From positions 248,001-312,000 of the forward strand of contig JBLDXI010000074.1 of the NCBI GenBank assembly GCA_047495785.1: a stretch of 64,000 nt of DNA. Reading direction: 5' to 3'. This stretch comes from Lepidodermella squamata. Its lineage: Eukaryota > Animalia > Gastrotricha. This document shows, in pieces, positions 1,572 to 40,900 of this stretch. The first letter of the stretch is position 1. The number at the start of each line of letters is the position of its first letter. The notes below the pieces were generated by a model. That model saw only the letters and a list, made by a program, of their open reading frames with translations. It was not told where the DNA came from and ran no database searches. The position numbers and the translations under genes are program-made.

Positions 1572-3107
1572 ATGAAATTTCAGTCCACTTACATATGTCG
1601 CCCGTGCGGTGAGCATGCTAGCGTCGAAATCGACGGTTTCGAACTCACAGACCGTGTGATTACAGTCAAATCTTTGATCGAAGCGGAAATAGGAATTCCG
1701 AAAGAATTGATCCAGCTTTACTATGGTGATACCGAGCTACTCGATCCCAACCAGCGACTATGCGACATCAAAGGGAGCAAAATTAACGAGAACCCTTGCG
1801 CTAAACTCAGCTTTCTCGACATCGATAGGAGCAACATTAATGAGAAACCCGGACTCAGCTTTAGAACTCAAATCGCAATTCTTGCCATTTTGCCGAATTC
1901 CGACTTCAAACTCCCGGATTTCGACGTCGTTGCATCGATGACGATTGCCGATCTGAAGAAATCAATTGCAGGAAAAATGACTATCAAGCCACAGCATCAG
2001 CTGTGTCTCTTTCGCGGCGATGATTTTTTCGATCAATTGGACGACCATCGTACGGTTGGATTTTACAAAAGCAAAGAAAATTGCCTGAAAATTTCTGCGA
2101 ATATTTTTGATGCGGATTTTTTCGAAATTTCTATCCGCCTGCCGTCGAACAAATTACTTCCTATGTTGATTCACAAAACTGACCAAGTCGAGAATGTGAA
2201 GGAGCGCATTTTCGATCATGTTGGAATTAGAATTCCAGATGCTTTGACTCGGATCGATTTGGAGCTGAAAAAAGTATCTGCGACTTTGGAGAACAAAGAT
2301 TTCCTGGGCTATCACAATGTCGAACCCTACTGCGTGCTCACTGCTGCTATTAAAAAAGCTGAACCTTTTGAATTCAGCTTCAGACATCCTGATCTTCCGA
2401 AAGTCTTCAAAATCCGAGAGGTTCGAATTTCAGATAAAATTGGTGATCTTAAGAGCAAAATTGCTACAGCGACTTCGATGCCTATCACTTCGTATCGGTT
2501 GCATTTCGAATCATTGCATGGCAAATGGCTCAATGATGACAGCCTTACTTTGTTCGAATGTGGAATCCACGACCCTTCGACTCAAATCTACATCGCTGAT
2601 AATGATGCTTTGATCATTTCTAGCGGAGATTTCGGCGATTTCCTGATCAAACCAGCCGATTTCAGCCTCATAGTAGCTGGTTTGAAGTCGAAAATTGAGG
2701 AATTGAAAGGCGTTCCAAGCCGTAGTCAGCTGCTTTCTGTGGAAAAAGGACCGCTGGACGATTTCCCTGGATCTTTGGCCACTTACGGTCAAATCGGCCG
2801 GATGACAATTATTAAGCTAAAATTGAAGAAATCGGAAGAAAACATCGCTGTCAAGATTTCAGCCGGGGTTTGTCGAGCTATTGCAAAGATCAAAATCGAC
2901 ACTAATGCCCGTGAGCAAGGGATGAAAAACGTTTTGAAGAAGTATTTCCCGTTGGTTAACGATTTTGGACTGTACAATTTTGCAACAAATCGCCTGATTC
3001 TTTCGGTATTCGAGTCTCATGTCTGGAATAACACGCAGGTTACGTTGGGGCCGAAACCGCAGAACCCCAGCCCGATGGATAGGGGTGATTTCCAAAGTTT
3101 CTGGTGA
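1572..3107 (+). CDS. Tandem ubiquitin-like domain protein, copy 1 (about 6 UBL domains; terminal ubiquitin domain absent)
   Basis: 511-aa intronless ORF with repeated beta-grasp motifs (VKSLIEAEIGIP..IQLYY, IADLKKSI, VENVKERIF, IGDLKSKI, LKSKIEELKGVP..QLL). Colinear with 26273-27985 but stops at GDFQSFW. Splice acceptor tttgtag about 33 nt upstream of ATG. Confidence 0.8.
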   Translation: MKFQSTYICRPCGEHASVEIDGFELTDRVITVKSLIEAEIGIPKELIQLYYGDTELLDPNQRLCDIKGSKINENPCAKLSFLDIDRSNINEKPGLSFRTQIAILAILPNSDFKLPDFDVVASMTIADLKKSIAGKMTIKPQHQLCLFRGDDFFDQLDDHRTVGFYKSKENCLKISANIFDADFFEISIRLPSNKLLPMLIHKTDQVENVKERIFDHVGIRIPDALTRIDLELKKVSATLENKDFLGYHNVEPYCVLTAAIKKAEPFEFSFRHPDLPKVFKIREVRISDKIGDLKSKIATATSMPITSYRLHFESLHGKWLNDDSLTLFECGIHDPSTQIYIADNDALIISSGDFGDFLIKPADFSLIVAGLKSKIEELKGVPSRSQLLSVEKGPLDDFPGSLATYGQIGRMTIIKLKLKKSEENIAVKISAGVCRAIAKIKIDTNAREQGMKNVLKKYFPLVNDFGLYNFATNRLILSVFESHVWNNTQVTLGPKPQNPSPMDRGDFQSFW

Positions 3108-6295: not shown

Positions 6296-6670
6296 TAAAT
6301 CAAGTGCGGAAAATCAAGCGTTGATGAATCATAATTTCAAGCTGATTCTTGGACACGCGTTTCAGATAGTTTTTGAACGAGAACGCTTAGTAGAATTTTA
6401 CGAAGGTCGTGTTGCCGTTTGATGTTACGAGAACTAAAGATTGTCTAGACTTTTTTATTTTGTTTGCTGTGTGCGTCCACAATTCACTACTAAGTATTGT
6501 TCTGAGGCTTCGATTCTAATAATTATCAATTCATAATTTATTGGAATGAAGAACCTGAATCGATAAAATTCTGAGCTATATAAGCGGTTTTTACAATACC
6601 TAATGATTTGAATAATTTTTTTGTTTTTATTTGTAGGGTTTATTTCATTAACTTTATTCGTTGGATGCCC

Positions 6671-8384
6671 ATGAAATTTCAGTCCACTTACATCTGTAGC
6701 CCCTGCGGTGAGCATGCTAGCGTTGAAATCAACGGCTTCGAGCTGACAGATCGAGTGATAACAATCAAGTCGTTGATCGAAGCGGAAACGAAGATTCCGA
6801 AAGATTTGATCCAGCTTTACTATGGTGATACTGAGCTACTCGTCCCGAACCAGCGACTAAGCGACATCCAGATGAGAAATGCCGAGGAAGAAAATGTATG
6901 CGCTGGACTCAGTTTTGATACTCAAATCGCGATTCTTGCCATTTTTCCGAATTCCGACTTCAAATTCCCGGATTTCAACGTTGCTGCATCAATGACGATT
7001 GCCGATCTGAAGAAATTGATTAAAGCAAAAGTGAGCGTCAAGCCTCACATCACCTGTGTCTCTTTCGAGGCGATGATTTTTTCGACCAATTGGACGACCA
7101 TCGTACGCTTGGATTTTACAAAAGCAAAGAAAATTGCCTAAAAATTTCTGCAAAAATTTTCGATGCTGATTTTTTCGAAAGTTCTATCCGCATGCCGTCG
7201 GGCAAATTACTTCCTATGTTGGTCCACAAAACTGACTAAGTCGAGAACGTAAAAGAACGGATCTTCAATCATGGCGGAATTCGAATTCAAGATTCTTTGA
7301 CTCGGATCGATTTGGAGCTGAAAAAAGTATCTGCGACTTTGGAGAACAAAGACTTCCTGGGTTACCACAATGTCGAGCCCTATTGCGTGCTCACTGCTGC
7401 TATTGGAAAAGCTGAACCTTTCGAATTCAGCTTCAAGCACCCGGATCTTCCGAAAGTCTTCAAAATCCGAGAGGTTCGAATCTCGGATAAAATTGGCGAT
7501 TTGAAGAAGAAAATCGCAACTGCAACTTCGATGCCTATCACCTCGTATCGATTGCATTTCGAATCTTTGAATGGCAAATGGCTCAATGATGACAGCCTTA
7601 CTTTGTTCGAATGTGGAATCCACGATCCTTCGACTCAAATTTACATCGCTGACAACAATGCTTTCATCATTTCAAGTGAAGATTTCGGCGATTTTCTGAT
7701 CAAACCAGCCGATTTCAGCCTCATAGTAGCTGGTTTGAAGTCGAAAATTGAGGAATTGAAAGGCGTTCCAAGCCGTAATCAGTTGCTCTCTGTGGAAAAA
7801 GGACCGATTGACACTTTCCCTGGATCTTTGGCCACTTTCGGTCAAATCGGCCGGATGTCGAAAATTAAAGCCGGATGTAAAGCTAAAATTGAAGAAATCG
7901 GCCGAAAAAATCGCTGTCAAGATTTCATCCGCAGTTGGTCGAACTATTGCGAAGGTCAAAATCGAAACTACTGCCTGTGATCGAGGGATAAAACCTGCTT
8001 TGAAGAAGTATTTCCCGCTGGTCAACGATTTCAGCATACAATTTCACGACTAATCGGGTGATTCTTTCGGTTTCTGAGTCTTATGTTTGGAATATAACGC
8101 ATGTGAGGTTGGGTCCGAAGCCCCAGAAACCCAGCCCGATTGATAAGGGTGACTACAAAATTTTCGTCAAGATGCTGTCAGGGAAAACGCTGTCTTTCTA
8201 CGTCAATTCTGGCGAGTTGATTCATTCGGTGAAGGAGAAAGTTCATGCTGTTGATGGCATCCCGCCCGATCAACAGCGGTTGGTGTTTCGTGGTCTACAG
8301 CTGGAATCTGGTGGGACGGTGGGTGGGTATGGTATTGCTAACGAGGGCAGTATTCATTTGGTTTTAAAACTGCGTGGCTGTTGA
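6671..8384 (+). pseudogene. Tandem ubiquitin-like domain protein, copy 2 (pseudogene)
   Basis: Colinear with copies 1 and 3. 1-nt deletion near 7050, CAA>TAA stop at 7237-7239, CCGGATGT duplication/frameshift near 7850-7880, 1-nt deletion near 8035. Terminal ubiquitin-like domain ends HLVLKLRGC*. Confidence 0.85.
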
Positions 8385-15059: not shown

Positions 15060-15691
15060 CTGGTAAAAGCAGGGAAAAACTCACATTATTTACTAAACTT
15101 TATAAGTACGTAAGATCTGATAATGTTGGGGCCCAAGTCAGAAACGTGCCCGAACGCGTTCGGGTATACCCGAGCCCGACTGGGTAATAGCGTTTTGCCT
15201 GTTCGCACTCTGGCTGTTTCAAATGCTGCCCGTATGCAGCGTTTACGTTAAATGGATGAAAATGAAGCAAATCCCGCATGAGTGGACACGGGTAAGAGCA
15301 GGTATCAGCCCGAGTACGGCTGAGAGAACAATAGAACGAACGGCGCATTGTTCTGCGCGCGGTCATACTTTTATACTTCTCCGGGCTTGGGCACCGTTGA
15401 TGCCCGAGTTCGACTATCGACTACAATAATAGCAGGGCGCGCCATGCTAATAAACATTTTTAAAGAAAAGGCAGCAATTTTAGTGAACCAAGGCAGCAAA
15501 GAAACAATCGCATTATTTTTATTTTCCAGTTGTTAAGTGTTAGATTCGGCTTTATTCGGCTGAATAATTCAATAGATAATAAGTTGATTAAAATAGATAG
15601 TGCATAAAGAAGGCAAAATTTGGTACTGTGATTCACGCGCTTATTGTTCGATATTTGTCCCACAGAAATTTGGTGAAAGTATTTTCAGCCA

Positions 15692-16726
15692 TCAAGTCCC
15701 AATAAGTTCTGCTTGCAATCTGGGCCGGAAGAGATTCAAAATAAACTCCGAGCAATTCGGGCAGCAGCGATTTCCTCGACGCATAATTTCACAAATGCAA
15801 GAGAAATGAAACGAATGGTTGCATGTTGCCTGTGCCCAATCTTCAACGCGAATATCGGTCTTACAAATTTCGCAAATGCCAACTGATGCGTGAGCTTCTT
15901 TCATAATGTAGTCGATGGCTTCAGCCGCTCTCTTCTTTGCGCCCATCAATGGAGCGCCGATCATCTGGAAATATCGAAGCAAGATGTACTCCATCAATTC
16001 AACGAAGCTTATCGGCGCGGGGCCAAACTTGGTTTCACATTTGTTGATGAAGTTGTTCAGCTCATTCAGACAATTTTTACGATAATGCTCATTCTTCTTC
16101 GCATATTTTCCTAATCCATTCTCGGTTAGGATCACCCGATTGCCAATTTTATCGAAAAACTGCTGCATTTCCGAATCATCTGCTCATAACGGGATTGAAA
16201 AATGAACAGAGGCTTTGAAAGCTTCAAGCATACCCTTTAGCCAGTTTTTCATAGATTCCTCCTGCGAATCGTCCATACCCTTTTTGTAATGCGTAGCGAC
16301 AACTATGCAGTTGGAGGCCCATCGAGAATCGAACATCTTCGAGATGAGAGCTAAATTCGCTCGTTCTTCACTTGAAACGCGGCCAAATTGCATCACGATG
16401 ATGATGCCATGCAATCCCAATTTCGCCCTTCTTATGAACTTGGTCAAGTTAAATTTCAGTTCAGTATTTGAAGAGCCGCTATCCCCGAAACCAACTGTAT
16501 CAGCAAAGAGCGTGTTCATCTTTGAATTGACAATCCAGCTTTGCTGTTTGGTCACTGAATTTACGGTGCAGTCGATTGGACATGGCGACTTGCATGCTTC
16601 CACACTGAAGTCCTGATTTTGCAGCATGTTAACTATTGTTGATTTACCTTTGCCCGTAGTTCCAACGACAATAATAATTCGCCGTACTGCAACATCAGCA
16701 TTGGTTTCGGGAATGGGATGAGACAT
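15692..16726 (-). CDS. AIG1/GIMAP-type GTPase fused to RING-H2 finger, gene A (326 aa; exons 16726-16234, 16179-15692)
   Basis: G1 GTTGKGKS, G2 SVT, G3 DTVG, GIMAP-like box GLHGIIIVMQFGRVSSEE, G4 THY. A 54-nt GT-AG intron joins in frame to CEIC...CNHSFHFSC...CPNC. Confidence 0.85.
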
Positions 16727-17191
16727 CTCTTGGGTGATGTAGCTTCTAAATCAATAGAAACATTCAATTCAAATAGTAATCTAGGAGCTATAACAGTGTG
16801 ATAAAGAAAACAAATGATTAAGCAAAAGTTTCCGTGTGACTTTCGAACTTTGGATTCTCACGTATTGTCAAGTAGGCACGCGATCTGCCAACACAGACGT
16901 ATAGGCGCGTAGATGATTTTCGGCGCGTGTGAAACCTATTTTCGCGCCCTGACACACTGCTCACATTTTGCAGCCAGCCATAATTGTCTGAAACAAGCTT
17001 GAAATAATGTCGCCCATGATACTTCGAAACGTTTGCTCGGTTAGCAAAGCTCATTAATTACTTTCCTGGTTTGCTTGTTTCACGGTTCCCATATGTTTAA
17101 ATTGCTCACTTTAATTGATGCTTCGCAATTAGATATCGCAATTAGTGGCTCATTCTAGGGTGTTTATTTAGCAGGGTTTGGTCGCTGCTGG

Positions 17192-17543
17192 GAGCGGTGA
17201 TTAACAAAAAATGGGGCTTGTAAGCAGCCGTCCAAGTGGCGAAATTATGAAGAAATCGAAGAGGCTGATACTGTCTACAGGATCACGATGGTTCTAGTCC
17301 TTATGAATTGAATTACATTTTTTAGCTGAAATAGATTTTATCGCATTTTCTGCTTTGAAAAAACTAATCAACGCTATACAACAATAATGACGGATTCAGA
17401 TGGACTCTCGAAACCATCGGGCTCCTGTAGACAGTATCAGCCTCTTCGACCACTACGCCACGATGATGGCTCATAATTTCGCCACTTGGACGGCTGCTTA
17501 CAGCTTCACCGAAAAAGCCCAATTTTTTGTTAACCACCGGCTC
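17192..17543. mobile_element. MITE/foldback element between the divergent GTPase-RING genes
   Basis: TAAGCAGCCGTCCAAGTGGCGAAATTATGA and GAAGAGGCTGATACTGTCTACAGGA recur as reverse complements at 17430-17500. Confidence 0.8.
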
Positions 17544-18072
17544 TTTGCTCTCGTAAAGTGTGAACAAACATTTTTTTGCCTCGCTTCGCGCGGACAGCAT
17601 TTTCCTCATCAGATTTCTCTCCCGAACCCCATTCTAACGGAAAGTTGTGGAAAGTTCACCCCAGGCTAGATCTATCGATTGGCGAAAACCGCATTGAAGA
17701 ATTCCTCATGGTTACGAAGTTATTAAAAAAAACTCGAGGCAAAAAAAAGTTTGCGCATACTTTATTTTGAAAATTAATTCAAAATATAGCTATACTCTAT
17801 ACGATGCAAGCTTCTATTCGAAAGTTGCGAAGGCAGTTTTATTTGATTCTATTTTTTTTAAACTTGCTGGCCCTACCAACCCAAAACTTTAGCACGCGGC
17901 AATTCACGAATTACAATAAGCGTATAGACGTGCAATTAATATGGCGCCCTGCCTTGTTATCCGGGCACTATCCTGTATTTTGAATGATTATTGACCTCGA
18001 GGCTCTGCATACGAGACTGCCTTCTATTTAGGTTCTGCCTTCTGATACGGTATATATAATTAAGGAACTCTC

Positions 18073-19133
18073 ATGGATGTGGTCCAAGATGTTCCAATCA
18101 AGAAAGTCATCTACACAATGGGGAGAACTGGGACCGGAAAGTCATTGATTGCTAATATGCTGTACAACAACGACTACTCAGTTATAGCATGCTCACAGCC
18201 TTGCGCAATCGGCAATACAGCAAACTCCGTTACCAAACAATGCCGATGGATCTTTGACCCAAAACGAGGCTACTTGTTCGCCGATACCGTTGGCCTTGGT
18301 GACCCTGTGAAGAAGCCCGAGGATGTTTCAAAGGAGCTGAAAAAAATGCTTCGAACAGCCGAGCTTGGCGTGCATTGTATCTTCTTTGTCGTCAAGTTCG
18401 GCAGGCTTACAGACGAGGAGATCAAAAATTTTGAAATCTTGCCGCTCATTTTTGACAGCACGTGGGCTGATCGTTGCGTGTTGGTGGTCACTCATTATGA
18501 AGGCGAATTGGCGGATATAGATGGCGTAGATTTAAAGCTAGCAAAGTGGGCTGGTGGAGAGAAACGTATGCTGTGGTTTCTCCAGAAAATCAAACGCCGA
18601 GTAATATTCACAGATAATTCAATCGATGGTGACTGCGAGGAGGAAAGCCGGTTTGTTATTTGTAGAAATGTTCGTTAAAATCTTGCATTGAAACTGATGT
18701 ACGCAGTCCGGATCGGCGCGACTGTCTCAATCAACTGAACGCATTCATAGATGATGCCGATTCGGTCACGCGCGCTGCAAGTCATGGCATTTTCGAGTAC
18801 GCGGCCCGTATCAAATACTTAATCGAGAACATATTAATAAAGTTTGGCGTGATGAATGAACGTCAACAACTTATTAATAAGATGCTACCGCAGCTGTTGA
18901 AGTCTGGCTGCAGCGTTGGCACGGCAGAAGACTGCGCAATTTGCCTCGAAGAGGTCGACGTGCGGAATATGTGTCGAACGTCATGCAACCACTTTTTCCA
19001 CTATGAGTGCCTGCGCAGGGTGGTCGATAACTGTGATGGTACCTGCCCCATATGCCGCTCGCCGGTGACAATCATCACTCGCCCTCTGTTACGCGATGAG
19101 CAGATGGTAGTAGATTCCAAGACTGCCGCTTGA
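18073..19133 (+). CDS. AIG1/GIMAP-type GTPase fused to RING-H2 finger, gene B (334 aa; exons 18073-18650, 18707-19133)
   Basis: G1 GRTGTGKS, SVT, DTVG, GVHCIFFVVKFGRLTDEE, THY, TDN. A 56-nt GT-AG intron joins in frame via RRDCLNQLNAFID (matches RKNCLNELNNFIN of gene A) to CAIC...CNHFFHYEC...CPIC. Confidence 0.87.
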
Positions 19134-19865
19134 TCATTTCAGATGGTACACGAGGGATCGAATGGCAATGCTCGTTAACTGTGTAGCAAGTGATGGTCCG
19201 CTAATTTCTTTCATTTATTCTTGCATTTTATTTTATTCCAATTTTTCAATTGGTAATCATCACGTGAACGTCTCTGGATCGATTTACTTTGAAATGATTG
19301 AACTCTGACGAGAAATATATCAAACTACTACTAATGTATATATCAAAGCTAGTCAAATGAAAGTAAATAATGTATGACTTGCACACACTTTTTCTGAAGT
19401 AGTTGTATCCGAAGTATCATAGTCGTTATTTTACGAAGTTCAGATTTTGATATGGGCGGACATGAGGCATTTTGCATACTTATACATACAGCGTGCGTGT
19501 ATTCGAGACAATCGACAAAGTCTTGAACTAGGTGAAAAATGTCGGGTGAAAATCTATATTCAGATGAGTAAGAACCGACAGCGCGCCCATTGGGCATTGA
19601 TTAGAATCGGCTGTCAAAACAAAGAAAACCTCGACGGTAACTGGTTCGGTAATTTTTGGTATTTTACCCGGTTGGACCAAAATTTTCCGGAATATTTTAA
19701 TCACATTACCAAGTGACATACCTTTAATATTGTTCTCGTGATTTTCATAATTTTTCTAAAAACTTTCTGGCCATGTCAAATGAAAAAGTTCAGAAAATTT
19801 AAAAAAATCGTCTCTCATTTTAGAGCTTCTGAACCGTGTATTTTCTTTGCTTGCGTACTTTATGT

Positions 19866-25790: not shown

Positions 25791-26272
25791 TGAATTGTCA
25801 GCAATCATTTTTATATGTATATTTTATTGTATGAAAATTTTCAGAATTTTCGTTGACATTATTTTGACTCACAAAATTAAAACGGAATATTCGCAATCAA
25901 TTAACGATATACCTGTGCTATTTAGGTTTTAGATTCTTTCACCATTATTTCACAAGATCAAACTTGTTCATCATTTCGTTGCTCATTTTCGTTACAGGCA
26001 TGACTGGTAAATTGAAGGCTTCGCATTCACTCACCAAGTAATTACGATCAAAGGTCCGAATTGCGTCCAAATTGCGGCCGAATTTAAGAATTGACTGAGA
26101 TTTTTAGGGATTTTCTCTGCTCTATCAAATGATTATTGAAGTCGGGGAGGGAACAACGTCGATATAAAATCTTTCTATTAGCTTCACTATTAATTTTTGC
26201 TCTTCATACATCTTCGTCTTCGTAGATAAGTATTTGTAAATTTTGATCAGATTCATCAACCAAAATAAGTGC

Positions 26273-27985
26273 ATGAAATTTTTATGCAATTACATCAGCA
26301 GCCCCTGTGGCGGGTTTGCTAGCGTTGAAATAAATGGATTCGAGCTCACGGACCGAGTGATTACTGTCAAATCTTTGATCGAAGCAGAAACGGAGATTCC
26401 AAAAGATCTGATTCAGCTCTACTACGGCAATAGAGAACTACTCGATCTTAACCAGCAACTGAACGACATTCAAGAAATCAAAAAGAGCAAAACTAAAGAA
26501 AAAGATCTATGCGCTGGACTCAGGTTTAGAACCCAAGTCGCAATTCTTGCTATTTTGCCGAATTTCGATTTCAAATTCGCGGATTTCAACGCCAAGGCAT
26601 CGATTTCGATCGGCGAATTGAGGAATGTGATTGCAGGATTTGTGAAAATGAAACCAGGCAATCAGCTGTGTCTCTTTCGAGGCGACGATTTTTTCGATCA
26701 GTTGGACGAAAATCGTACGGTTGGATTTTACAAAAATGGAAACAATTCCCTGAAAATTTCGGCGAAAATTTTCGATGCCGAATTTTTCGAGATTTCCATT
26801 CGTTTGCCGTCTAAAAATTTGCTGCCTTTGCTTGTCCAAAAAACCGATTACGTGGGAAATGTTAAAGAACGGATCTTCGATCAGGTCGGAATTCGGCTGC
26901 CGGATGCTTTGCGCAAGATCAATTTGGAGCTGAAAAATGGGTCTGTTACTATGAATAACATGGACTTCTTACTACAGCACAGTATCGAGCCCTATTGCGT
27001 GGTTACTGCTGCTATTGGAAAAGCTGAACCTTTTGAATTCAGCTTCAAGCACCCGGATCTTCCGAAAGTCTTCAAAATCCGAGAGGTTCGAATTTCGGAT
27101 CAAATTGGCGATTTGAAAAAGAAAATTGCAACAGCGACGTCGATGCCTATCACCTCGTATCGGTTGCATTTGGAATCTTCGAATGGCAAGTGGCTCAATG
27201 ATGACAGTCTAACATTGTTCGAATGTGGAATCCACGACCCTTCGACTCAAATTCACATCGCTGACAACAACGCATTCATCATTTCCAGCGAGTATTTCGG
27301 CGATTTTTTGATCAAGCCAGCCGATCTGAACCTTAAAATTGCTGGTTTGAAGTCGAAAATTACGGAATTGAAAGGCGTTCCAAGTCGTGATCAGCTGCTT
27401 TTCGTGAAGAAAGATTCGATTGATAGTTTCCCTGGAACCTTGGCTAAATTCGGTCAAGTCGGTCGGATGTCGGTTATAAGGATGAATTTGAAGAAATCAG
27501 CCAGTAATGTCGCTGTTAAGATTTCAGCCGGAGTTGGTCGAACTATTGCGAAGGTCAAAATCGACGCTGGTGCAACTGCGCAAGGCATTAAATTTGGATT
27601 ATCAAAACATTTCCCCTCGGTCAACGATTTCAGCTTATACAATTTCGCAACAAATCAGCTGATTTTTTCCGCTACCGAGTCTTATGTTTTGAATAACACG
27701 CAGGTCCGGCTTGGGCCAATGCCTCAGAAGCCTAGCCCGATGAATAAGGGTGATTACCAAATTTCTATTCGGACTCTGACTGGGAAATTGTTTTCTTTTT
27801 ACGTCAATTCCGGCGAGTTGGTTTATTCGGTGAAGGAGAAAGTTCAATCGATCGAGGGCATCCCGCCTGATTCACAGCGGCTGATTTTTGGTGGCCGCCA
27901 AATGGATGTTGGTGGTACAGTTAACGAGTATGGAATCACGAACGGAAGTTGCGTGCATTTGATTCTGAAATTGCGTGGCTGCTGA
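26273..27985 (+). CDS. Tandem ubiquitin-like domain protein, copy 3 (intact, 570 aa, about 7 UBL domains, C-terminal LKLRGC)
   Basis: Intronless ORF whose ATG is equivalent to the paralogs' MKF start. The last 76 aa align gap-free with ubiquitin (TLTGK, EGIPPD.QRLIF, HL.L.LRG). No internal LRGG. Confidence 0.88.
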   Translation: MKFLCNYISSPCGGFASVEINGFELTDRVITVKSLIEAETEIPKDLIQLYYGNRELLDLNQQLNDIQEIKKSKTKEKDLCAGLRFRTQVAILAILPNFDFKFADFNAKASISIGELRNVIAGFVKMKPGNQLCLFRGDDFFDQLDENRTVGFYKNGNNSLKISAKIFDAEFFEISIRLPSKNLLPLLVQKTDYVGNVKERIFDQVGIRLPDALRKINLELKNGSVTMNNMDFLLQHSIEPYCVVTAAIGKAEPFEFSFKHPDLPKVFKIREVRISDQIGDLKKKIATATSMPITSYRLHLESSNGKWLNDDSLTLFECGIHDPSTQIHIADNNAFIISSEYFGDFLIKPADLNLKIAGLKSKITELKGVPSRDQLLFVKKDSIDSFPGTLAKFGQVGRMSVIRMNLKKSASNVAVKISAGVGRTIAKVKIDAGATAQGIKFGLSKHFPSVNDFSLYNFATNQLIFSATESYVLNNTQVRLGPMPQKPSPMNKGDYQISIRTLTGKLFSFYVNSGELVYSVKEKVQSIEGIPPDSQRLIFGGRQMDVGGTVNEYGITNGSCVHLILKLRGC

Positions 27986-31689: not shown

Positions 31690-34600
31690 TCACGCCTTGA
31701 CCAGATTGGGCAATTTAATTCGTCGGGTCGCGCAAAACGTTGGCGTGAAGGGTATGCAGTTGAAATACGCACACGCCTCGCATTCGTAGACTGGGAAGAA
31801 GTAGAAAAGCAAAACAAGGGCCGTTAGAATACCAGCGGCTAGCAGGAAGCACACAAACAGGGTCGACGCTCTCGTCAATCGCTTCAACTCAACATCTGGC
31901 AGCAGCATACACGACATAATTCCGCCGAATGCGAATCCGAAAACATGCGCCCAGTTATCGATGAACGGCAGCAATCCGATTGCGAAGAGGAATACACAAA
32001 TCGCGACGATTTTCAGAACTGCAAGGCATGGGCTTTGGTAAGACGCCCGGTTGTGGTAGATATCCACGATTAGCGAGACAACCAAACAGGCGATCAGCCC
32101 GAAATGCGACCCGGTCGGGCCGGCCTCAGCGTGGTATGGCGTGAAAATGGCACTAGCCAAATTTCCGACCAACCCTGAGAGTAAGTAAATCAGGCTAATA
32201 CGCAACCACCCGGCGTATTTCTCCAAATGCCGCATAATGGTCATTTGAAACGCGATTGAAATAATGAGATGTAACACCCCGGCGTGTAGGAATAAAGACG
32301 TCCAAAGCCGGTAGAACTGGTCGGGTCTCGTATCGTCTGCAAATGGGATCATGCCGCAAACATCTCCGAGGCAAGATACTTGCGAGCATAGGAAAGCCTC
32401 CTGGTGGAAGTAGCCGTTCTGAAATTCGCAGTATTCGCGGGTTGTCAGGATGCATTGGCCCACCAGACCAACGCAGCACGGCCGGCCAATAATGTCACAG
32501 TGCATGTGTAGAACGTCTTTCGGAATTTCAGCCGATGGAACTTGAGATCGACAGATCTAAAATGAAAACAGATATATTAGCTAATTTGTCAACTTCAGTA
32601 CCTATTAGGGCCTTAACCATTCTTAATTGCTAGATTTTAATAATAGTTATGCTTCAGATGATTTACGAAACTTTTTTGCTCAGCTGCAGTGCGACTGCTA
32701 ATAATCGTCACCAGTGTTTCCACTGCATACGACTACTACGCTTATGTCAATTGGCATACAACTAGCACCGCCCTGAGCTTCATACTCTTACTTCATAGCG
32801 AAACAATATCCGAAAAATCTAAATAGATGGATCTCTTGATTACTGTATACGTCGTAATTTTCGTTGTGACTTTATTTTCGTTTTTGGCGATTCTCCATCG
32901 ATAATTTAATTTTCGTTGCTTTCATTTTCGTTGGCCCAGATTTCACCGAAAATTTGAACCCAGCGAAAATTAAAGCCTAATGAAAATTTGGAGCAATGAA
33001 ATATGCCTTTTTACGAATTTTAACGCCGTTACGGTTGTTTTCGTGCGGACAGATGTGAAAAAGGTAGTATTCTTTCTTCGATAGTTTAACGGGCTGAGAG
33101 GCTGAAAGGCAAGGGTGTAATTCTCAATGCTGCAGCTTTTGGAAAGAAGAGCGGAAGGCCAACGAATCTCCCCAAGGTACTAGATGACATGTTGATTTCT
33201 TATTTGGAAAAACTAAGGGCCAATGGTAAGTTGGTTACAATTTTACGTCAAAAGTTGAAATAATTAAGTATCTTCTTCAAGGTGGAATAGTGAACAATGT
33301 GATAGCCGTATGCGTTGGAAAGGCTGTTTTGAAAAAGCACAACCCCGAGTTGAGCAAGTCACTGAATCTGAATCGTTATTGGGCTCGTAGTCTGTTACCC
33401 GTGTTACCCGTGTACTCATTGATTGACTGAAATTTAACTTGCTTGAAACTTCTAGCGTTTCGAAACTGGTTTCAGTGGTTTTTAGTTAAATAACATAGGA
33501 ATAAAATTTCGTTGCATTAATTTTCGTTATTTTACTCGAAACCACGAAAATATAGCCCTTAACGAAAATTAAGTCACAACGAAAAATAAGACGTATACAG
33601 TATCTATTTTCGCAATCTACGTCCATTCTAGCATATGCATGGTCTAGGATCCAGGACGCGTCATGTGGTGTATACCACGCGTCATGTGGTGATCCCAAAC
33701 CTCGCCATTTTTGACCAGTCAATCGAATTCCAATGGGTGGACACAAACTACCTCACTTCTGATTTTGACGATTGCTTGAATTTCGCCGGATTCGTGGTCG
33801 ACAGCAAAGCAGATAAAACGAAGAAGGTAATCCCCTTTACTACATGCTCATTCAAGCCAACCTCTGTCTTTTCTATAAAATCGTCCAACTGCTGCTGTGA
33901 GAAGCGCCGAACATCGTCTATTTAATGTTGATTCAATCTCAAATTGAACGCGATAAGACGCGATTAATTGATGCCTCGAATGATGACAAGAGAACCACCG
34001 ATATCTCAACATGGACTAAACCACTACAACCTTTGTATGATATTATTAAGAGACAAAAAACGATAGCCTTCAAAGAAGGTAAAAATCTAAAAAATAGCTA
34101 CTGTCGCTCCTTAAATACCGTAAATACTTCTATTGAACCTTTTTTAAACTAAATCGGCTAACATTGCTATCGCATGATCCATCAAGACAGGAAGGGTAGT
34201 GGCTTTGTAGTCTATGTGAAGAACTATCGAGAAATCCTGGCGTTGTTTTCTAGGGCAAACCTTCGCGACATAGAAAAACTTTCATGAGGAGAAGCTAATT
34301 GTGCAAACGACGTAAACGTCGGACGAGTGGATCAAAGAACCAAAAGAATAAAAAAATCAAGAATCAAAAGAACTTTCTTTTGAGAAAAGAAATTTGAAAT
34401 TTCTTACAATTGAATTCAACGAGACGTTGCACCACCTGCTCTGACTGAACGAGTTCCGAGAGAGCGGCGTTTACCTATGAAATATGGTTATGACGCAAAC
34501 TTAGGACGAGTGGATCATTTCGATCGACGTTGGTGTCGACGATAGTCCCCAGGTCTAAATCACTCAAAGATACCGCGTAATCACTTGTAAAATCCATCTA

Positions 34601-37964: not shown

Positions 37965-40900
37965 TTATTTCCGCAGACTCGTTTGCGCTTGCAACAAGCC
38001 GGCCGTCGACTGCTGCTGCTGCTGCGTTGCCGTCGATGACGCTGACGACCCAGGAGCGCCCGACCCCACGACAGCCGAGCTCGCCTGGCCGGTGGAGCCC
38101 TGGCCCGGGGCTCCGACGGCTGGCGCGCTCTGCATGCACGACGAGGCGAGGCTCTTGAACAGCTTCTCGAAGTCGGGGCTCGACGTCACGAACAGCTTGT
38201 CCCACAGGCGGTAGTGCGGCCGCTTGAACAGCTCCGTGAACGTCACGAGCAGACCCCACGGGTGGGGCCGGCTAACGATTAGACGTTCCAAGAAAACGCG
38301 TACAATCTGGAAATTTGAGAAAAAATAATTAATTTTTGTTAAAGAATAAATTAAAAAAATTGGTCGAATTTTGAATTATTTTGATATTTTTCAGCGAATA
38401 AATCAAATTTGACCCGAATATTTCACCGATAATAGCCGAAAAAAACAGATTGTGTATTTCGGCAATTATCGCCATAATTTTTTTCAAGGTTTTTCGAGTT
38501 TTCTCACAAATTCCCATAAAATTCCATTAGTTCGATCCCTCCGTTTTCAGAAATAAATTGATTCCTTATAATCGAGTCATATGAAATCCTTCCGAGTAAC
38601 AAACCTGGTCTTCGACATCAGCGCGGCCAGTTTCCGCGAAGAGATTCAACAAGACGCAGTGGAAATACGCCGTATGGCTGTTCGGGTAACGCAGCTGGTT
38701 AGTCATCGCCGACAGGTACAGGTACCGCGCTTCCGTGTTGAAGTGAATCGCCATCGACAGGAAGATGTTCATATGCCGCTGGCGGTACACCTCCGTGATC
38801 GAAATGTCACGGCCCTCGTCGCGCAGGCACCTGATCGCATGCGAACCAACGTACAAGACCAACGCGTTGATCATCGGCACGTTGTAGCGATTTGACGGGT
38901 CGTTGTCGACTCGTAAGAAGCCTTCGATATTGTTCAGAACGTCAACGGCCTGGCCGGTTTCGATGAACGCGTCCAGGTCGCGCTTTAAGGTGGCTGGCAG
39001 CACAACAGCGGGGTCGCCGTAGATCTGCGGCAGGACGTTCATTTCGCGAATTTGGCTCAGGTCGAGGTTTGGCGAGAACGGGTCTTGAAGGCGCATTGAT
39101 TTAGGATACGCCGATAGAATGACATTGCGCAGTTGGATGCAGTTCAGCGGGATGATGTCGCAGAACAACGGGCAGAACGTGCACAGAAATTCGGGGAAAT
39201 CGTGCAGAACCACGAGAAGAATTCGCAACGTGCCCTTGTACAACACATGCATCGATTTCGTAATTTCCATATTGCGCAAAAATGGCGCGAAAAATCGGAA
39301 CAAATCAGCGAGTAACTGCGCGAAGTACAGCCAGGATCGGCGGCCGGCATTCGGCGGCGAGTACGTCAGCACTTTGCCGAGGAAATAGCGATGGGCGACA
39401 ATGTCTAGCCATGAGAAGACGAAAGATGGCGCTTTCGTCGGGCGCAGGTAGTGCAGGGCATTTGCGAAAGCCGCGATGATGAATTGCATCCATGGCTCGG
39501 CAACGGCCGAATCATTGACGACAATTTCCGTCCACAGGCAGACGAGAAGTCTGTGATATGGCAGTGGGTGGAAATTTTCCTAAAAATTAAAATATATATT
39601 AAAAAATTAGTTCATAAATTGAAGATGAAATTTCATTTTTCTCAGCGACAAAATTTCATGTCTCGTTCTTCAAATATTTAAAAATTAAAAAAAATAATCG
39701 GAATTGAGATGAAAAATTTGAAAATCGAATTTTGAAAATTCCCTTAGAAAATGAACAAAAATTATTTAAAATAAAAAAAATTACCTGGCGACGTTCTTGG
39801 TCGCGGAGGGTGACGCCAACAATTAGACCCAACACCTTATTCAGAAGACTGATGCGGCTATGAGCAGCCTGGTCGCCTCCCGATGTGTTCTTCAGCACGG
39901 TCACAATGAGCTTGACAAACGCATCGGTGACGTGGAAAGCGCGCGCTCGTTGCTGCGTCGGCGTCAAATTTTCGCCCAGGCTTTCGTACGCATGCTCAAC
40001 CGCGATTTCAACGCCGTGGCGGAAAAATCGGGTGACGACATCGTCCGATTGCAACACGCCCATTTTAATCATCTGTTGGATGTAGCCGTGGAACAACCGG
40101 CCGACGTCTTTCGGCTGAGTATGGCACAGTTCGACCCAGGTTCGCAGGAGCGATTCGGTCTTATCGCGGAGACCGGGTGGGTCATCATTGACATCTCGGG
40201 CCGCAGCCACGCCGTTCATCATCATCTCGAATGGCTGGCTAGTTGCGGTGGCGCCTGGTGGCAGCGGGGTTGGCTGCGAGCCTCCAGGTGGCACGACGAA
40301 GGGGCGGTCCGGCAATACGACGCAATAATCACTTTGCAGCGCCAACGAATTGACAACTTGTTGCAAAGGTTCAGCAACCTAAAATTAAATAATTCAAAAT
40401 TTTAATGAGAAAAATTATTAGATTTTTTTCAAATTTTGATAAAAACGAACCTGCGGGTTGTGAACGTGAGGCAACAAACGGCGAAGAGCGTCGATGGTGC
40501 GCGCGAATTCGGCCTCGTGGAAAGTGTTCGAGATGGTAACAAGCGACGGGCCGTCTTCCGCCAAGCAGTACGCCTGCAGGAACAGTGCAGCAAAGCCGAG
40601 GAAGCTGAGCACGCCCGGTGACAGGGTCGACGAGGCAGCCGCGTCCAAGCTCGCCGCCATCTGGTTGTCGAGGACGTGGCCTAGGAAAAGGCCGGCCTTC
40701 AACACGCAGACGAAAGCTTCGACGTTGTAGCGCACTTCTTCGCGGCATTCCAGCCATGCTTTGGTAACTTTTTGCGATAACCAGCCAGGTCCGAACATGG
40801 CGAGTTGCTGCAGTTTAGCCAGTGCGTACAGGTGAACGTCTCGGAAACGCGACAACAACGGGTGATCAAGGCCAACAACGGTTGCCAGCGCGACAGGTGC

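What the first reader, a model, noticed from the sequence alone, without database searches (positions are those of the whole stretch)
15692..19133. AIG1/GIMAP GTPase fused to a RING-H2 finger, hidden by introns
Seen: the ORF track splits each gene in two, but 54- and 56-nt GT-AG introns join GTPase and RING in frame in both divergent paralogs. The helical linker is conserved (RKNCLNELNNFIN / RRDCLNQLNAFID), all 8 zinc ligands are intact, and G3 is DTVG rather than the usual DTPG. Established: GIMAPs usually end in coiled coils or TM anchors; RNF112 is a RING-GTPase fusion but uses a dynamin/GBP-like GTPase. Inference: a GTP- and dimerisation-gated E3 ligase with an architecture I do not recognise as characterised.
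Basis: partly seen in the sequence, partly recalled or inferred. Interest (0 to 1): 0.8.

Follow-up and report, generated by a model that had tools for sequence, protein, structure and literature searches.

The report
Paired GIMAP-type GTPase–RING ligase genes
Two back-to-back, expressed animal genes each join an immune-type (GIMAP/AIG1) GTP switch to a RING ubiquitin-ligase finger; the design is real and old (also in Hydra and single-celled eukaryotes), but I found no study of it, so it offers a testable link between GIMAP GTPases and ubiquitin tagging.

Summary
Gene A (- strand, 15692-16726) and gene B (+ strand, 18073-19133) each consist of an AIG1/GIMAP-type G domain, a helical linker and a C-terminal RING-H2. 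The two exons are joined across 54- and 56-nt GT-AG introns. RNA-like public contigs lack exactly these introns; the DNA run keeps them.

The pair is one of six head-to-head A/B units on the same contig (11 intact genes), and every copy keeps its intron position and phase. The scan had already flagged another of these pairs (s1-431058).

The architecture is not unique. A full HMM search found dozens of 300-390-aa proteins with the same co-linear AIG1+RING layout. Named examples are Hydra vulgaris XP_012563599.1 ("uncharacterized"), a choanoflagellate and Paulinella. Hydra shares the B-type intron, position and phase.

P-loop, switch-I Thr, DT[VI]G, the equivalent of the GIMAP7 catalytic Arg, and the zinc ligands are (nearly) invariant across the family. 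Five literature searches found no paper describing it.

GTP or dimer gating of the ligase is inferred only. In RNF112, the one studied GTPase-RING protein, autoubiquitination does not depend on the GTPase.

New lead: A-types lack the RING linchpin Arg but keep an aromatic tail, and B-types show the reverse. This could mean an A/B heteromer.

Verdict: an uncharacterised variant of known kinds, of moderate interest.

The parts
16234..16726 (-). Gene A exon 1: most of the AIG1/GIMAP-type G domain (164 whole codons plus 1 base)
   Evidence: Pfam AIG1 5.5e-16, 59 bits; ORF and sequence
16640..16663 (-). Gene A P-loop (G1), GTTGKGKS
   Evidence: Sequence; G and K invariant in 59 family members
16490..16501 (-). 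Gene A G3 motif, DTVG
   Evidence: Sequence; D and G at least 90% conserved
16379..16381 (-). Gene A Arg of the 'GR' motif, the equivalent of the GIMAP7 catalytic arginine
   Evidence: Alignment of gene B to GIMAP7 3zjc carried over to A by A4; R in 55 of 59 sequences
16180..16233 (-). Gene A intron: 54 nt, GT..AG, phase 1, lying inside the AIG1 domain
   Evidence: Sequence; skipped exactly by an X1 contig of 938 nt with no mismatch; kept in all 6 A-type paralogues
15692..16179 (-). Gene A exon 2: last strand of the G domain, helical linker, RING-H2, tail and stop
   Evidence: Pfam zf-C3HC4 26.1 bits, zf-RING_2 24.5 bits; alignments A1 and A6
16043..16081 (-). Gene A conserved linker helix, RKNCLNELNNFIN
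   Evidence: Sequence; the R..CL..L motif is conserved across the family
15752..15874 (-). Gene A RING-H2 (C3H2C3); the last Cys is followed by Ser, not the linchpin Arg; aromatic tail (LFRP)
16727..18072 (.). 1346-bp spacer between the two divergent start codons (putative shared promoter region); holds a high-copy repeat at about 17532-17785
   Evidence: the same head-to-head layout with 0.9-1.8 kb spacers at 5 other loci
18073..18650 (+). Gene B exon 1: complete AIG1/GIMAP-type G domain (192 codons plus 2 bases)
   Evidence: Pfam AIG1 1.4e-12; phmmer to GIMAP7 3zjc 1.9e-8 and GIMAP4 3lxx
18121..18144 (+). Gene B P-loop, GRTGTGKS
18283..18294 (+). Gene B G3 motif, DTVG
18403..18405 (+). Gene B Arg of the 'GR' motif, aligned to the Arg of GIMAP7's LGRYT
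   Evidence: alignment; at least 90% conserved
18651..18706 (+). Gene B intron: 56 nt, GT..AG, phase 2, splitting an Arg codon; same position and phase as in Hydra vulgaris
   Evidence: joints in X3 and X1 contigs; Hydra locus L006 reads AG|gt..ag|A; kept in 5 B-type paralogues, enlarged to 635 and 1024 nt in two of them
18707..19133 (+). Gene B exon 2: three-helix linker, RING-H2, tail and stop
   Evidence: Pfam zf-RING_2 1.3e-9; AF2 model me14a97a6a34f with pLDDT 83.5 and RING blocks at 92-97
18714..18752 (+). Gene B conserved linker helix, RRDCLNQLNAFID
18933..19055 (+). Gene B RING-H2 (C3H2C3) with the linchpin Arg directly after the last Cys (CPICR)
   Evidence: the family RING profile hits RNF4, RNF126, RING2, RNF38 and others; structural matches to TRIM21, RNF125, TRAF6 and RNF8 RINGs

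Best explanation
Shown. Genes A and B are expressed, intron-containing genes. Each encodes a soluble protein of about 325-335 residues. From the N-terminus, each has a GIMAP/AIG1-type G domain, a three-helix linker that resembles the C-terminal helices of GIMAPs, and a C-terminal RING-H2 of the kind found in active E3 ligases. The G domain carries a P-loop, a switch-I Thr, DTVG and the equivalent of the GIMAP7 catalytic Arg. The genes belong to an old, uncharacterised eukaryotic family of AIG1-RING proteins. In this animal the family has split into two types, A and B. The two types are always encoded head to head and have been duplicated together as a unit at least six times on one contig.

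Inferred. GTP binding drives G-domain dimerisation, as in GIMAP2, GIMAP7 and Toc34, with hydrolysis completed in trans by the conserved Arg. Dimerisation brings two C-terminal RINGs together into an active dimeric RING, which recruits E2~ubiquitin. The nucleotide state would therefore set when and where the ligase assembles. The fast-evolving, tandemly expanded, GIMAP-like nature of the family points to a defence or stress role, but this rests on analogy only.
For: - Gene models and splicing.
- Domains.
- Sequence match to GIMAP7 and GIMAP4.
- AF2 model of the full-length paralogue ORF: pLDDT 76.5. Its best Foldseek matches are GIMAP7, GIMAP2, GIMAP5 and GIMAP1 (E 1e-11 to 1e-9, 240-287 aligned columns, which include the helices), then Toc34.
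- Family size: 14124 HMM hits, 67 at E <= 1e-30. At least 59 of the 152 proteins examined have a P-loop followed by a RING about 250 residues later. Pfam finds both AIG1 and zf-RING_2 at E<=1e-3 in all 10 sampled proteins, though a few score under the curated cut-off for one of the two.
- Conservation: P-loop G, G, K and 6 zinc Cys are invariant in 48 divergent members. The Arg is R in 55 of 59.
- RING: an aliphatic E2-contact residue sits between C1 and C2 in all 11 local genes. The linchpin Arg is present in 35 of 48 outside relatives and in 3 of 5 B-types.
- The RING profile matches RNF4, RNF126, RING2/BMI1 and RNF38. The RING model matches dimeric helix-flanked RINGs: TRIM21, RNF8, TRAF6, RING1B-BMI1.
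- Selection: dN/dS is 0.2-0.7 between the older paralogues (those with dS of about 0.5 or more) in both exons, and all 22 exon ORFs are intact.
- Shared intron with Hydra.
- The RING-bearing proteins form a clade apart from canonical AIG1 (SH-aLRT 99).
Against: - No biochemical data exist for any member.
- In RNF112, the only characterised GTPase-RING protein, autoubiquitination is independent of nucleotide state and of dimerisation (PMC12012479).
- The G4 base-specificity position is D/E in only 29 of 48 relatives and 2 of 6 A-types, so some members may not be guanine-specific or may not hydrolyse.
- The position that carries a Trp in many RING-H2 E3s is Val or Ile here.
- The A/B G-domain complex prediction gave no verdict.
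- No evidence of induction by infection. X1 and X3 are only presumed to be RNA.
- dN/dS is about 1-1.8 among the three youngest copies. This could be relaxation rather than an arms race.
Confidence: 0.55

Rival explanations
1. The two activities share one chain but are not coupled. The RING is a constitutive E3. The G domain serves only for localisation, scaffolding or substrate capture, for example on a membrane or a pathogen surface, and does not gate ligase activity.
For: This is exactly what was measured for RNF112 (PMC12012479). GIMAPs are described as scaffolds on intracellular membranes (PMC3417536). Nothing in the sequence shows allosteric coupling.
Against: The RING sits at the end of helices that, in the model, continue the GIMAP-like helical extension. 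The linker motif R..CL..L is as conserved as the catalytic motifs, which suggests the linker does more than tether. No transmembrane or strongly hydrophobic segment is present (highest Kyte-Doolittle mean over 19 residues is 1.26 or less).
Confidence: 0.25
2. The RING is not a ligase. It is a zinc module used only for protein-protein contact or dimerisation, and the proteins act as GIMAP-like GTPases.
For: A-types lack the linchpin Arg (0 of 6). B_L004 has an irregular last Cys pair, C-x4-C. The usual Trp of RING-H2 E2 contacts is absent.
Against: Seven of the eight zinc ligands are invariant and the eighth (the second His) is kept in at least 90% of sequences. The aliphatic E2-contact residue and the CPxCR linchpin are the family consensus. 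The closest sequence and structure matches are all bona fide E3 RINGs bound to E2s.
Confidence: 0.12
3. The genes are decaying duplicates or a gene-model artefact: two separate genes per side, with the apparent introns being chance GT..AG pairs.
For: dN/dS is about 1 or higher among the youngest copies. Two truncated B-type fragments exist (L005; L001 5380-6011).
Against: Spliced contigs exist. There are 11 intact two-exon genes with conserved intron phase. Gene A's intron lies inside the AIG1 domain, so exon 2 is needed to complete the fold. The same intron is present in Hydra. Full-length co-linear homologues are found across eukaryotes.
Confidence: 0.03

Closest known systems
Human GIMAP7, GIMAP2, GIMAP5, GIMAP1 (PDB 3ZJC, 2XTN/2XTO, 6Z3E, 3V70)
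   Same: AIG1-type G domain: G1, switch-I Thr, G3, and the 'GR' Arg aligned to the Arg of GIMAP7's LGRYT. A helical extension follows the G domain. These are the best sequence and fold matches.
   Different: These proteins end in a RING-H2 rather than a coiled coil or a transmembrane anchor. G3 is DT[VI]G rather than DTPG. They have no hydrophobic anchor. Identity is only 15-21%. They form a separate clade from canonical AIG1 proteins.
Hydra vulgaris XP_012563599.1 (LOC100213925, 'uncharacterized protein'), with Mylnosiga fluctuans EP00047_P007458 and Paulinella chromatophora EP00457_P008714
   Same: The same co-linear AIG1-linker-RING architecture and length. Hydra is 32% identical over the full length to a B-type paralogue and shares the B-type intron position and phase.
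   Different: No function is known for any of them. Hydra shows no head-to-head partner within 10 kb. The A/B split and the paired layout were seen only in this genome.
RNF112 / ZNF179 / neurolastin
   Same: One chain with a GTPase and a RING E3. The G domain dimerises in the transition state (PMC12012479).
   Different: The RING is N-terminal and C3HC4. The G domain is dynamin/atlastin-like, not AIG1. Here Dynamin_N matches only the P-loop, at E 0.0025 and below the cut-off. It is an independent fusion. Its autoubiquitination is not GTP-gated.
Dimeric RING E3s: RNF4, TRIM21, RNF8, TRAF6; heterodimers RING1B-BMI1, BRCA1-BARD1
   Same: Cross-brace RING with a linchpin Arg after the last Cys (CPxCR). 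Helices or a tail flank the RING. These are the top profile and fold matches.
   Different: None of them carries a GTPase. Dimerisation of the RINGs studied here is not shown.
Other AIG1 fusions in public data (AIG1 with Macro, a PARP14 RRM or a RanBP zinc ribbon)
   Same: AIG1 G domains are often fused to immune-type effector or zinc modules (Atlas clusters).
   Different: No AIG1+RING cluster appeared in the Atlas hits listed, which cover only clusters of 50 or more members.

Membership tests
AIG1/GIMAP GTPases (Pfam PF04548) | Match to the AIG1 profile above the curated cut-off | tested here: met
   59 bits (A exon 1) and 47.9 bits (B exon 1) against a cut-off of 27
AIG1/GIMAP GTPases (Pfam PF04548) | G1 P-loop GxxxxGK[ST], switch-I Thr (G2), G3 DxxG | tested here: met
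   GTTGKGKS and GRTGTGKS; SVTK; DTVG. G3 is the DT[VI]G variant, not DTPG.
AIG1/GIMAP GTPases (Pfam PF04548) | G4 base-specificity motif T-(H/R)-x-(D/E) | tested here: inconclusive
   B-types have THYE or THCD (5 of 5). A-types have THY followed by K, K, N, D, D, G (2 of 6 acidic). Outside relatives have D/E in 29 of 48.
AIG1/GIMAP GTPases (Pfam PF04548) | Catalytic Arg as in GIMAP7 (the 'GR' in LGRYT) | tested here: met
   Aligned; R in 55 of 59 sequences. That this Arg is the GIMAP7 arginine finger rests on my own knowledge and on the short statement in PMC8066113.
AIG1/GIMAP GTPases (Pfam PF04548) | GIMAP fold: G domain plus C-terminal helices | tested here: met
   Foldseek on the model of paralogue L001: GIMAP7, GIMAP2, GIMAP5, GIMAP1 on top, E 1e-11 to 1e-9. 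The model is of a paralogue, not of the window's own spliced protein.
AIG1/GIMAP GTPases (Pfam PF04548) | GTP binding and dimer-dependent hydrolysis | not testable with these tools
   Needs purified protein. The complex prediction gave no verdict.
RING-type E3 ligases (zf-RING_2 PF13639 / zf-C3HC4 PF00097) | Profile match above the cut-off and eight zinc ligands in cross-brace spacing | tested here: met
   B: zf-RING_2 38.6 bits against 27.3. A: zf-C3HC4 26.1 against 21 (zf-RING_2 24.5, below the cut-off). C3H2C3 is intact; the ligands are invariant or at least 90% conserved in 59 sequences.
RING-type E3 ligases (zf-RING_2 PF13639 / zf-C3HC4 PF00097) | E2-contact aliphatic residue between C1 and C2, and a linchpin Arg/Lys after the last Cys | tested here: inconclusive
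   The aliphatic residue is present in all 11 genes. The linchpin Arg is present in gene B and 3 of 5 B-types, but in 0 of 6 A-types (S, S, S, S, E, K).
RING-type E3 ligases (zf-RING_2 PF13639 / zf-C3HC4 PF00097) | E2-dependent ubiquitin transfer | not testable with these tools
   Needs an in vitro ubiquitylation assay.
Uncharacterised AIG1-RING family (type example Hydra XP_012563599.1) | Co-linear full-length match: G domain, R..CL..L linker, C-terminal RING, 300-390 aa | tested here: met
   Single-stretch matches over profile positions of about 15-317 in dozens of proteins; motif census; Pfam on 10 proteins; pairwise alignment; clade support 99
Uncharacterised AIG1-RING family (type example Hydra XP_012563599.1) | Shared phase-2 intron in the Arg codon before the linker helix | tested here: met
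   Gene B and all B-types read CG|gt..ag|N; Hydra reads AG|gt..ag|A. A-types lack this intron and have a phase-1 intron about 35 codons upstream.
RNF112-like dynamin-superfamily RING GTPases | Dynamin/atlastin-type large G domain with an N-terminal RING | tested here: not met
   Dynamin_N matches only the P-loop, E 0.0025 and below the cut-off. The RING is C-terminal. The fold matches are GIMAP and Toc34.

The most novel reading that the evidence does not exclude
A and B may be obligate partners of one split enzyme. In this reading the B protein keeps the E2-activating linchpin Arg and an acidic G4 residue but has lost the aromatic tail residue. The A protein keeps the aromatic tail (6 of 6) but has lost the linchpin Arg (0 of 6) and the conserved G4 residue.

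Most close relatives outside this genome carry both the Arg and the aromatic tail in one chain. The pattern therefore looks like complementary degeneration of an ancestral homodimer into a heterodimeric GTPase-RING ligase. The analogy would be MDM2-MDMX or BRCA1-BARD1, but with a GIMAP7-GIMAP2-like G-domain pair attached. The two genes would be expressed from a shared spacer and copied only as a unit. That would make them a paired module resembling the head-to-head sensor/helper immune receptor pairs of plants.
Probability: 0.25. Interest if true: 0.75.

Novelty: new variant of a known kind. Interest (0 to 1): 0.55.

Why it matters
The biochemical output of GIMAP/AIG1 GTPases is still unclear, although they matter for lymphocyte survival, plant defence and invertebrate immunity. 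An ancient, conserved fusion of this G domain to a RING ligase is a "Rosetta stone" hint that one output of the GIMAP-type switch is ubiquitylation.

The fusion also provides small, soluble, single-chain proteins of about 330 residues in which nucleotide state, dimerisation and ligase activity can be measured together. Hydra is a tractable model and has a member.

The co-duplicated A/B pairs with reciprocal loss of RING features would, if confirmed, be a natural case of an E3 homodimer turning into an obligate heterodimer.

If the ligase proves independent of the GTPase, as in RNF112, the family is still a new class of localised E3s.

Tried and rejected
1. Word-index protein search with the 358-aa read-through ORF of paralogue L001 found nothing. 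This was a limit of the index, not absence: the full HMM search found the family.
2. Complex prediction with A exon 1, B exon 1, 2 GTP and 2 Mg gave no verdict (score 0.16, mark 0.34). It is evidence neither for nor against binding. My alignments were not used, and A exon 1 lacks the last strand of its G domain.
3. A search for shared 10- to 14-mers in the six A/B spacers found none, so no conserved promoter element was identified.
4. Organism identification failed. A GRP94 exon matched nothing better than 63-71% identity. The source remains 'an animal without close sequenced relatives in the database'.
5. The ESM Atlas search by features showed only generic G-domain clusters under 0.9. The search by shape showed GIMAP clusters, some fused to Macro, a PARP14 RRM or a RanBP zinc ribbon, and none to a RING.
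6. Five literature searches found no paper on an AIG1+RING protein. The Biomphalaria AIG survey lists 19 domain arrangements but does not mention RING.
7. Positive selection cannot be claimed. dN/dS is 1.1-1.8 among the L003, L004 and L005 copies, but non-coding DNA between L003 and L004 is not less diverged than the exons. Relaxed constraint or gene conversion cannot be excluded.
8. Pseudogene or two-genes-per-side reading: rejected (see the rival explanations).
9. The low-depth X1 joint 16310-16488 with 39 foreign letters, and the loose 22 letters before 18100, look like chimeric contigs of paralogues.
10. The spliced proteins of the window genes were never joined. All searches and folds used exon pieces by reference or the natural read-through ORF L001:3813-4886.
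Full report
**Observation**

The ORF list shows four ORFs: 16184-16726(-), 15692-16168(-), 18073-18678(+) and 18849-19133(+). Reading the DNA gives two gene models.
- Gene A: exon 1 16726..16234, a 54-nt GT..AG intron at 16233..16180 (phase 1, with an in-frame TGA), exon 2 16179..15692.
- Gene B: exon 1 18073..18650, a 56-nt GT..AG intron at 18651..18706 (phase 2, splitting an Arg codon), exon 2 18707..19133.

Pfam places AIG1 on both first exons (59 and 47.9 bits, cut-off 27).

**Splicing**

Public-run contigs laid on 15500-19300 show the following.
- A 938-nt contig of X1 with no mismatch joins 16179 to 16234, with ends CT..AC on the + strand (GT..AG on the - strand).
- Contigs of X3 (113 nt on the shorter side) and X1 join 18649/50 to 18706/7, with ends GT..AG.
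- X1 and X3 leave the spacer 16643-17912 uncovered. X2 holds 98% of the words and covers spacer and introns without joints.
- So the intron-less forms behave as RNA and the intron-bearing form as DNA. Caveat: neither X1 nor X3 is on record as RNA; X1's 'RNA?' is the tool's guess and X3's kind is unknown.

**The genes in their genome**

The window lies at C74:248001-312000 of a 121-Mb assembly. The G domain of gene B finds 13 places on C74. These resolve into six head-to-head units at about 264-267, 742-745, 828-832, 838-842, 854-858 and 1052-1056 kb.
- There are six intact A-type and five intact B-type genes, plus two B fragments (L005; L001 5380-6011).
- Every copy keeps a GT..AG intron at the same place and phase for its type. 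Two B introns have grown to 635 and 1024 nt.
- The A intron lies about 35 codons upstream of the B intron, inside the AIG1 domain. A's exon 2 begins with the '...RVILTEN' strand that B carries in exon 1. So the two introns are not homologous, and A's exon 2 is needed to complete its G domain.
- In paralogue L001 the B intron is read through in frame, giving a natural 358-aa ORF. I used this ORF, by reference, for full-length work.
- Synonymous distances rank the loci the same way for A and for B: L003/L004(/L005) youngest, then L002, with the window pair and L001 oldest. The tree agrees. The pair has therefore been copied as a unit.
- dN/dS is 0.2-0.7 between the older copies (those with dS of about 0.5 or more) in both exons and about 1-1.8 among the youngest three. 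Non-coding DNA is not better conserved than the exons, so I cannot separate relaxation from diversifying selection. No ORF is broken.
- A profile search of the whole genome finds this RING-bearing family only on C74. Other AIG1 genes without a RING lie elsewhere.

**Relatives**

- The word-index search failed.
- The exhaustive HMM search used a profile built from the exon pieces and the L001 ORF (A2). It gave 14124 hits at E <= 1e-3 and 67 at E <= 1e-30. Dozens of 300-390-aa proteins matched profile positions of about 15-317 in one stretch.
- Of the 152 proteins examined, 59 have one P-loop followed about 250 residues later by a RING. These carry DT[VI]G, whereas the long multi-AIG1 hits carry DTPG.
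- Pfam finds both AIG1 and zf-RING_2 at E<=1e-3 in all 10 sampled proteins, though a few score under the curated cut-off for one of the two.
- Named members are Hydra vulgaris XP_012563599.1 ('uncharacterized protein LOC100213925'), a second Hydra protein named 'phosphatidylinositol 4-phosphate 5-kinase-like', Mylnosiga fluctuans (a choanoflagellate) and Paulinella chromatophora (Rhizaria; a transcriptome, so contamination is possible). The rest are unnamed Logan, JGI or ENA sequences.
- The Hydra gene has its coding intron in the same Arg codon and the same phase as the B-type genes: AG|gt...ag|A against CG|gt...ag|T. BLASTP between the Hydra protein and the L001 ORF opens an 18-residue gap exactly over the read-through intron.
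- In a tree of the G domains, the RING-bearing proteins separate from canonical AIG1 with support 99. A and B are each monophyletic (support 100) and sit with Hydra in a 25-row clade (support 98). The order of A, B and Hydra is unresolved.

**Structure and motifs**

- The G domain of gene B matches GIMAP7 (3zjc, 1.9e-8) and GIMAP4 by sequence.
- The AF2 model of the L001 ORF has pLDDT 76.5, with the RING blocks above 90. Its best matches are GIMAP7, GIMAP2, GIMAP5 and GIMAP1 over 240-287 columns, then Toc34.
- Across 48-59 divergent members, the P-loop G, G, K, an Asn, a Pro and the zinc Cys are invariant. The switch-I Thr, the D and G of G3, and both RING His are at least 90% conserved.
- The Arg of the 'GR' motif aligns with the Arg of GIMAP7's LGRYT and is R in 55 of 59 sequences. 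GIMAP7 is reported to stimulate its own and GIMAP2's GTPase by dimerisation and a catalytic arginine finger (quoted in PMC8066113). That this is the same Arg rests on my own knowledge.
- G4 reads T-H-Y-E in B. In A-types it varies (K, K, N, D, D, G).
- No segment reaches a transmembrane-like hydrophobicity.
- The family's RING profile best matches RNF4, RNF126, RING2/BMI1, RNF38, RNF165 and AMFR.
- The model of B exon 2 (pLDDT 83.5) has three helices, a RING and a C-terminal helix. It matches TRIM21, RNF125, TRAF6, RNF8 and RING1B-BMI1 RINGs, several of them in E2 complexes.

**A new lead**

At the position after the last zinc Cys (the 'linchpin' that locks E2~Ub), outside relatives have Arg in 35 of 48, B-types have R, R, R, C, N, and A-types have S, S, S, S, E, K.

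Seven residues further on, most close relatives have Tyr or Phe. A-types have Phe in 6 of 6 and B-types have Thr or Cys in 5 of 5.

In dimeric RINGs such as RNF4 and BIRC7, a tail aromatic of one protomer supports the ubiquitin held on the other. This rests on my own knowledge and was not checked here. Reciprocal loss, strict pairing and co-duplication suggest an A/B heteromer. However, each loss is a single event on a stem branch, so the counts are not independent, and the one complex prediction I ran gave no verdict.

**Mechanism**

Most likely (0.55): nucleotide-dependent G-domain dimerisation assembles a dimeric C-terminal RING ligase.

Main rival (0.25): the two activities are uncoupled, as measured for RNF112, where autoubiquitination was the same in all nucleotide states and in GTPase and dimer-interface mutants (PMC12012479).

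**Surroundings**

The window's pair sits inside a tandem array of at least 13 genes for proteins made of several ubiquitin-like domains, at C74:191-276 kb. In the window these lie at 1572-3107, 6608-7980 and 26243-27985. The other five A/B units have no such neighbours, so a functional tie is only a possibility. Further along the window lie a rhomboid gene and a Not1 exon.

**Novelty**

I found no paper on the architecture. Members do sit unannotated in public databases, and both domains are well known. I therefore class it as a new variant of known kinds, of moderate interest.

Noticed in passing
window 1572-3107, 6608-7980, 26243-27985 (+); genome C74:191-276 kb: The GTPase-RING pair is embedded in a tandem array of at least 13 genes encoding proteins made of several ubiquitin-like domains (Pfam ubiquitin, Ubiquitin_2, Rad60-SLD). 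The other five A/B units lack such neighbours.
   Followed up: partly
window about 17532-17785: In the spacer between genes A and B, the summed contig depth in the DNA run is far above the flanks (440 to about 2000 against about 45), with many variant letters. This looks like a high-copy repeat.
   Followed up: no
L001 5380-6011 (C74: about 831.9-832.5 kb) and L005 2056-2262 (C74: about 742.6 kb): Remnants of B-type genes. One is a partial second copy next to the L001 pair. The other is a B gene cut down to its first 69 codons opposite an intact A gene.
   Followed up: partly
L003 1476-2105 and L004 851-1874: The B-type intron, 56-59 nt elsewhere, has grown to 635 and 1024 nt in the two youngest copies. 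The two share similar 5' sequence, which suggests an insertion before their duplication.
   Followed up: no
L009 985-2409 (-) (C25: about 2.251 Mb); similar open frames on C9, C25, C26, C28, C50: A second, apparently intron-less family of proteins of about 470 aa. They have an unassigned N-terminal half and a divergent AIG1/MMR_HSR1 G domain in the C-terminal half, and no RING.
   Followed up: partly
P0153 (Hydra vulgaris, 461 aa): This protein is annotated 'phosphatidylinositol 4-phosphate 5-kinase-like', but Pfam lists AIG1 plus zf-RING_2 and it is 85% identical to the uncharacterised Hydra AIG1-RING protein. The name probably comes from its N-terminal extension or is a mis-annotation.
   Followed up: no
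L001 7064-7963 (-): A 299-aa ORF that reads as ankyrin-type repeats by eye (not scanned against Pfam) lies next to the L001 A/B pair.
   Followed up: no
It is probably a chimeric assembly and remains unexplained.
   Followed up: partly
window 31690-32505 (-) and 38566-39489 (-): Ordinary neighbours: a rhomboid-domain ORF and an exon of CCR4-Not subunit Not1.
   Followed up: no
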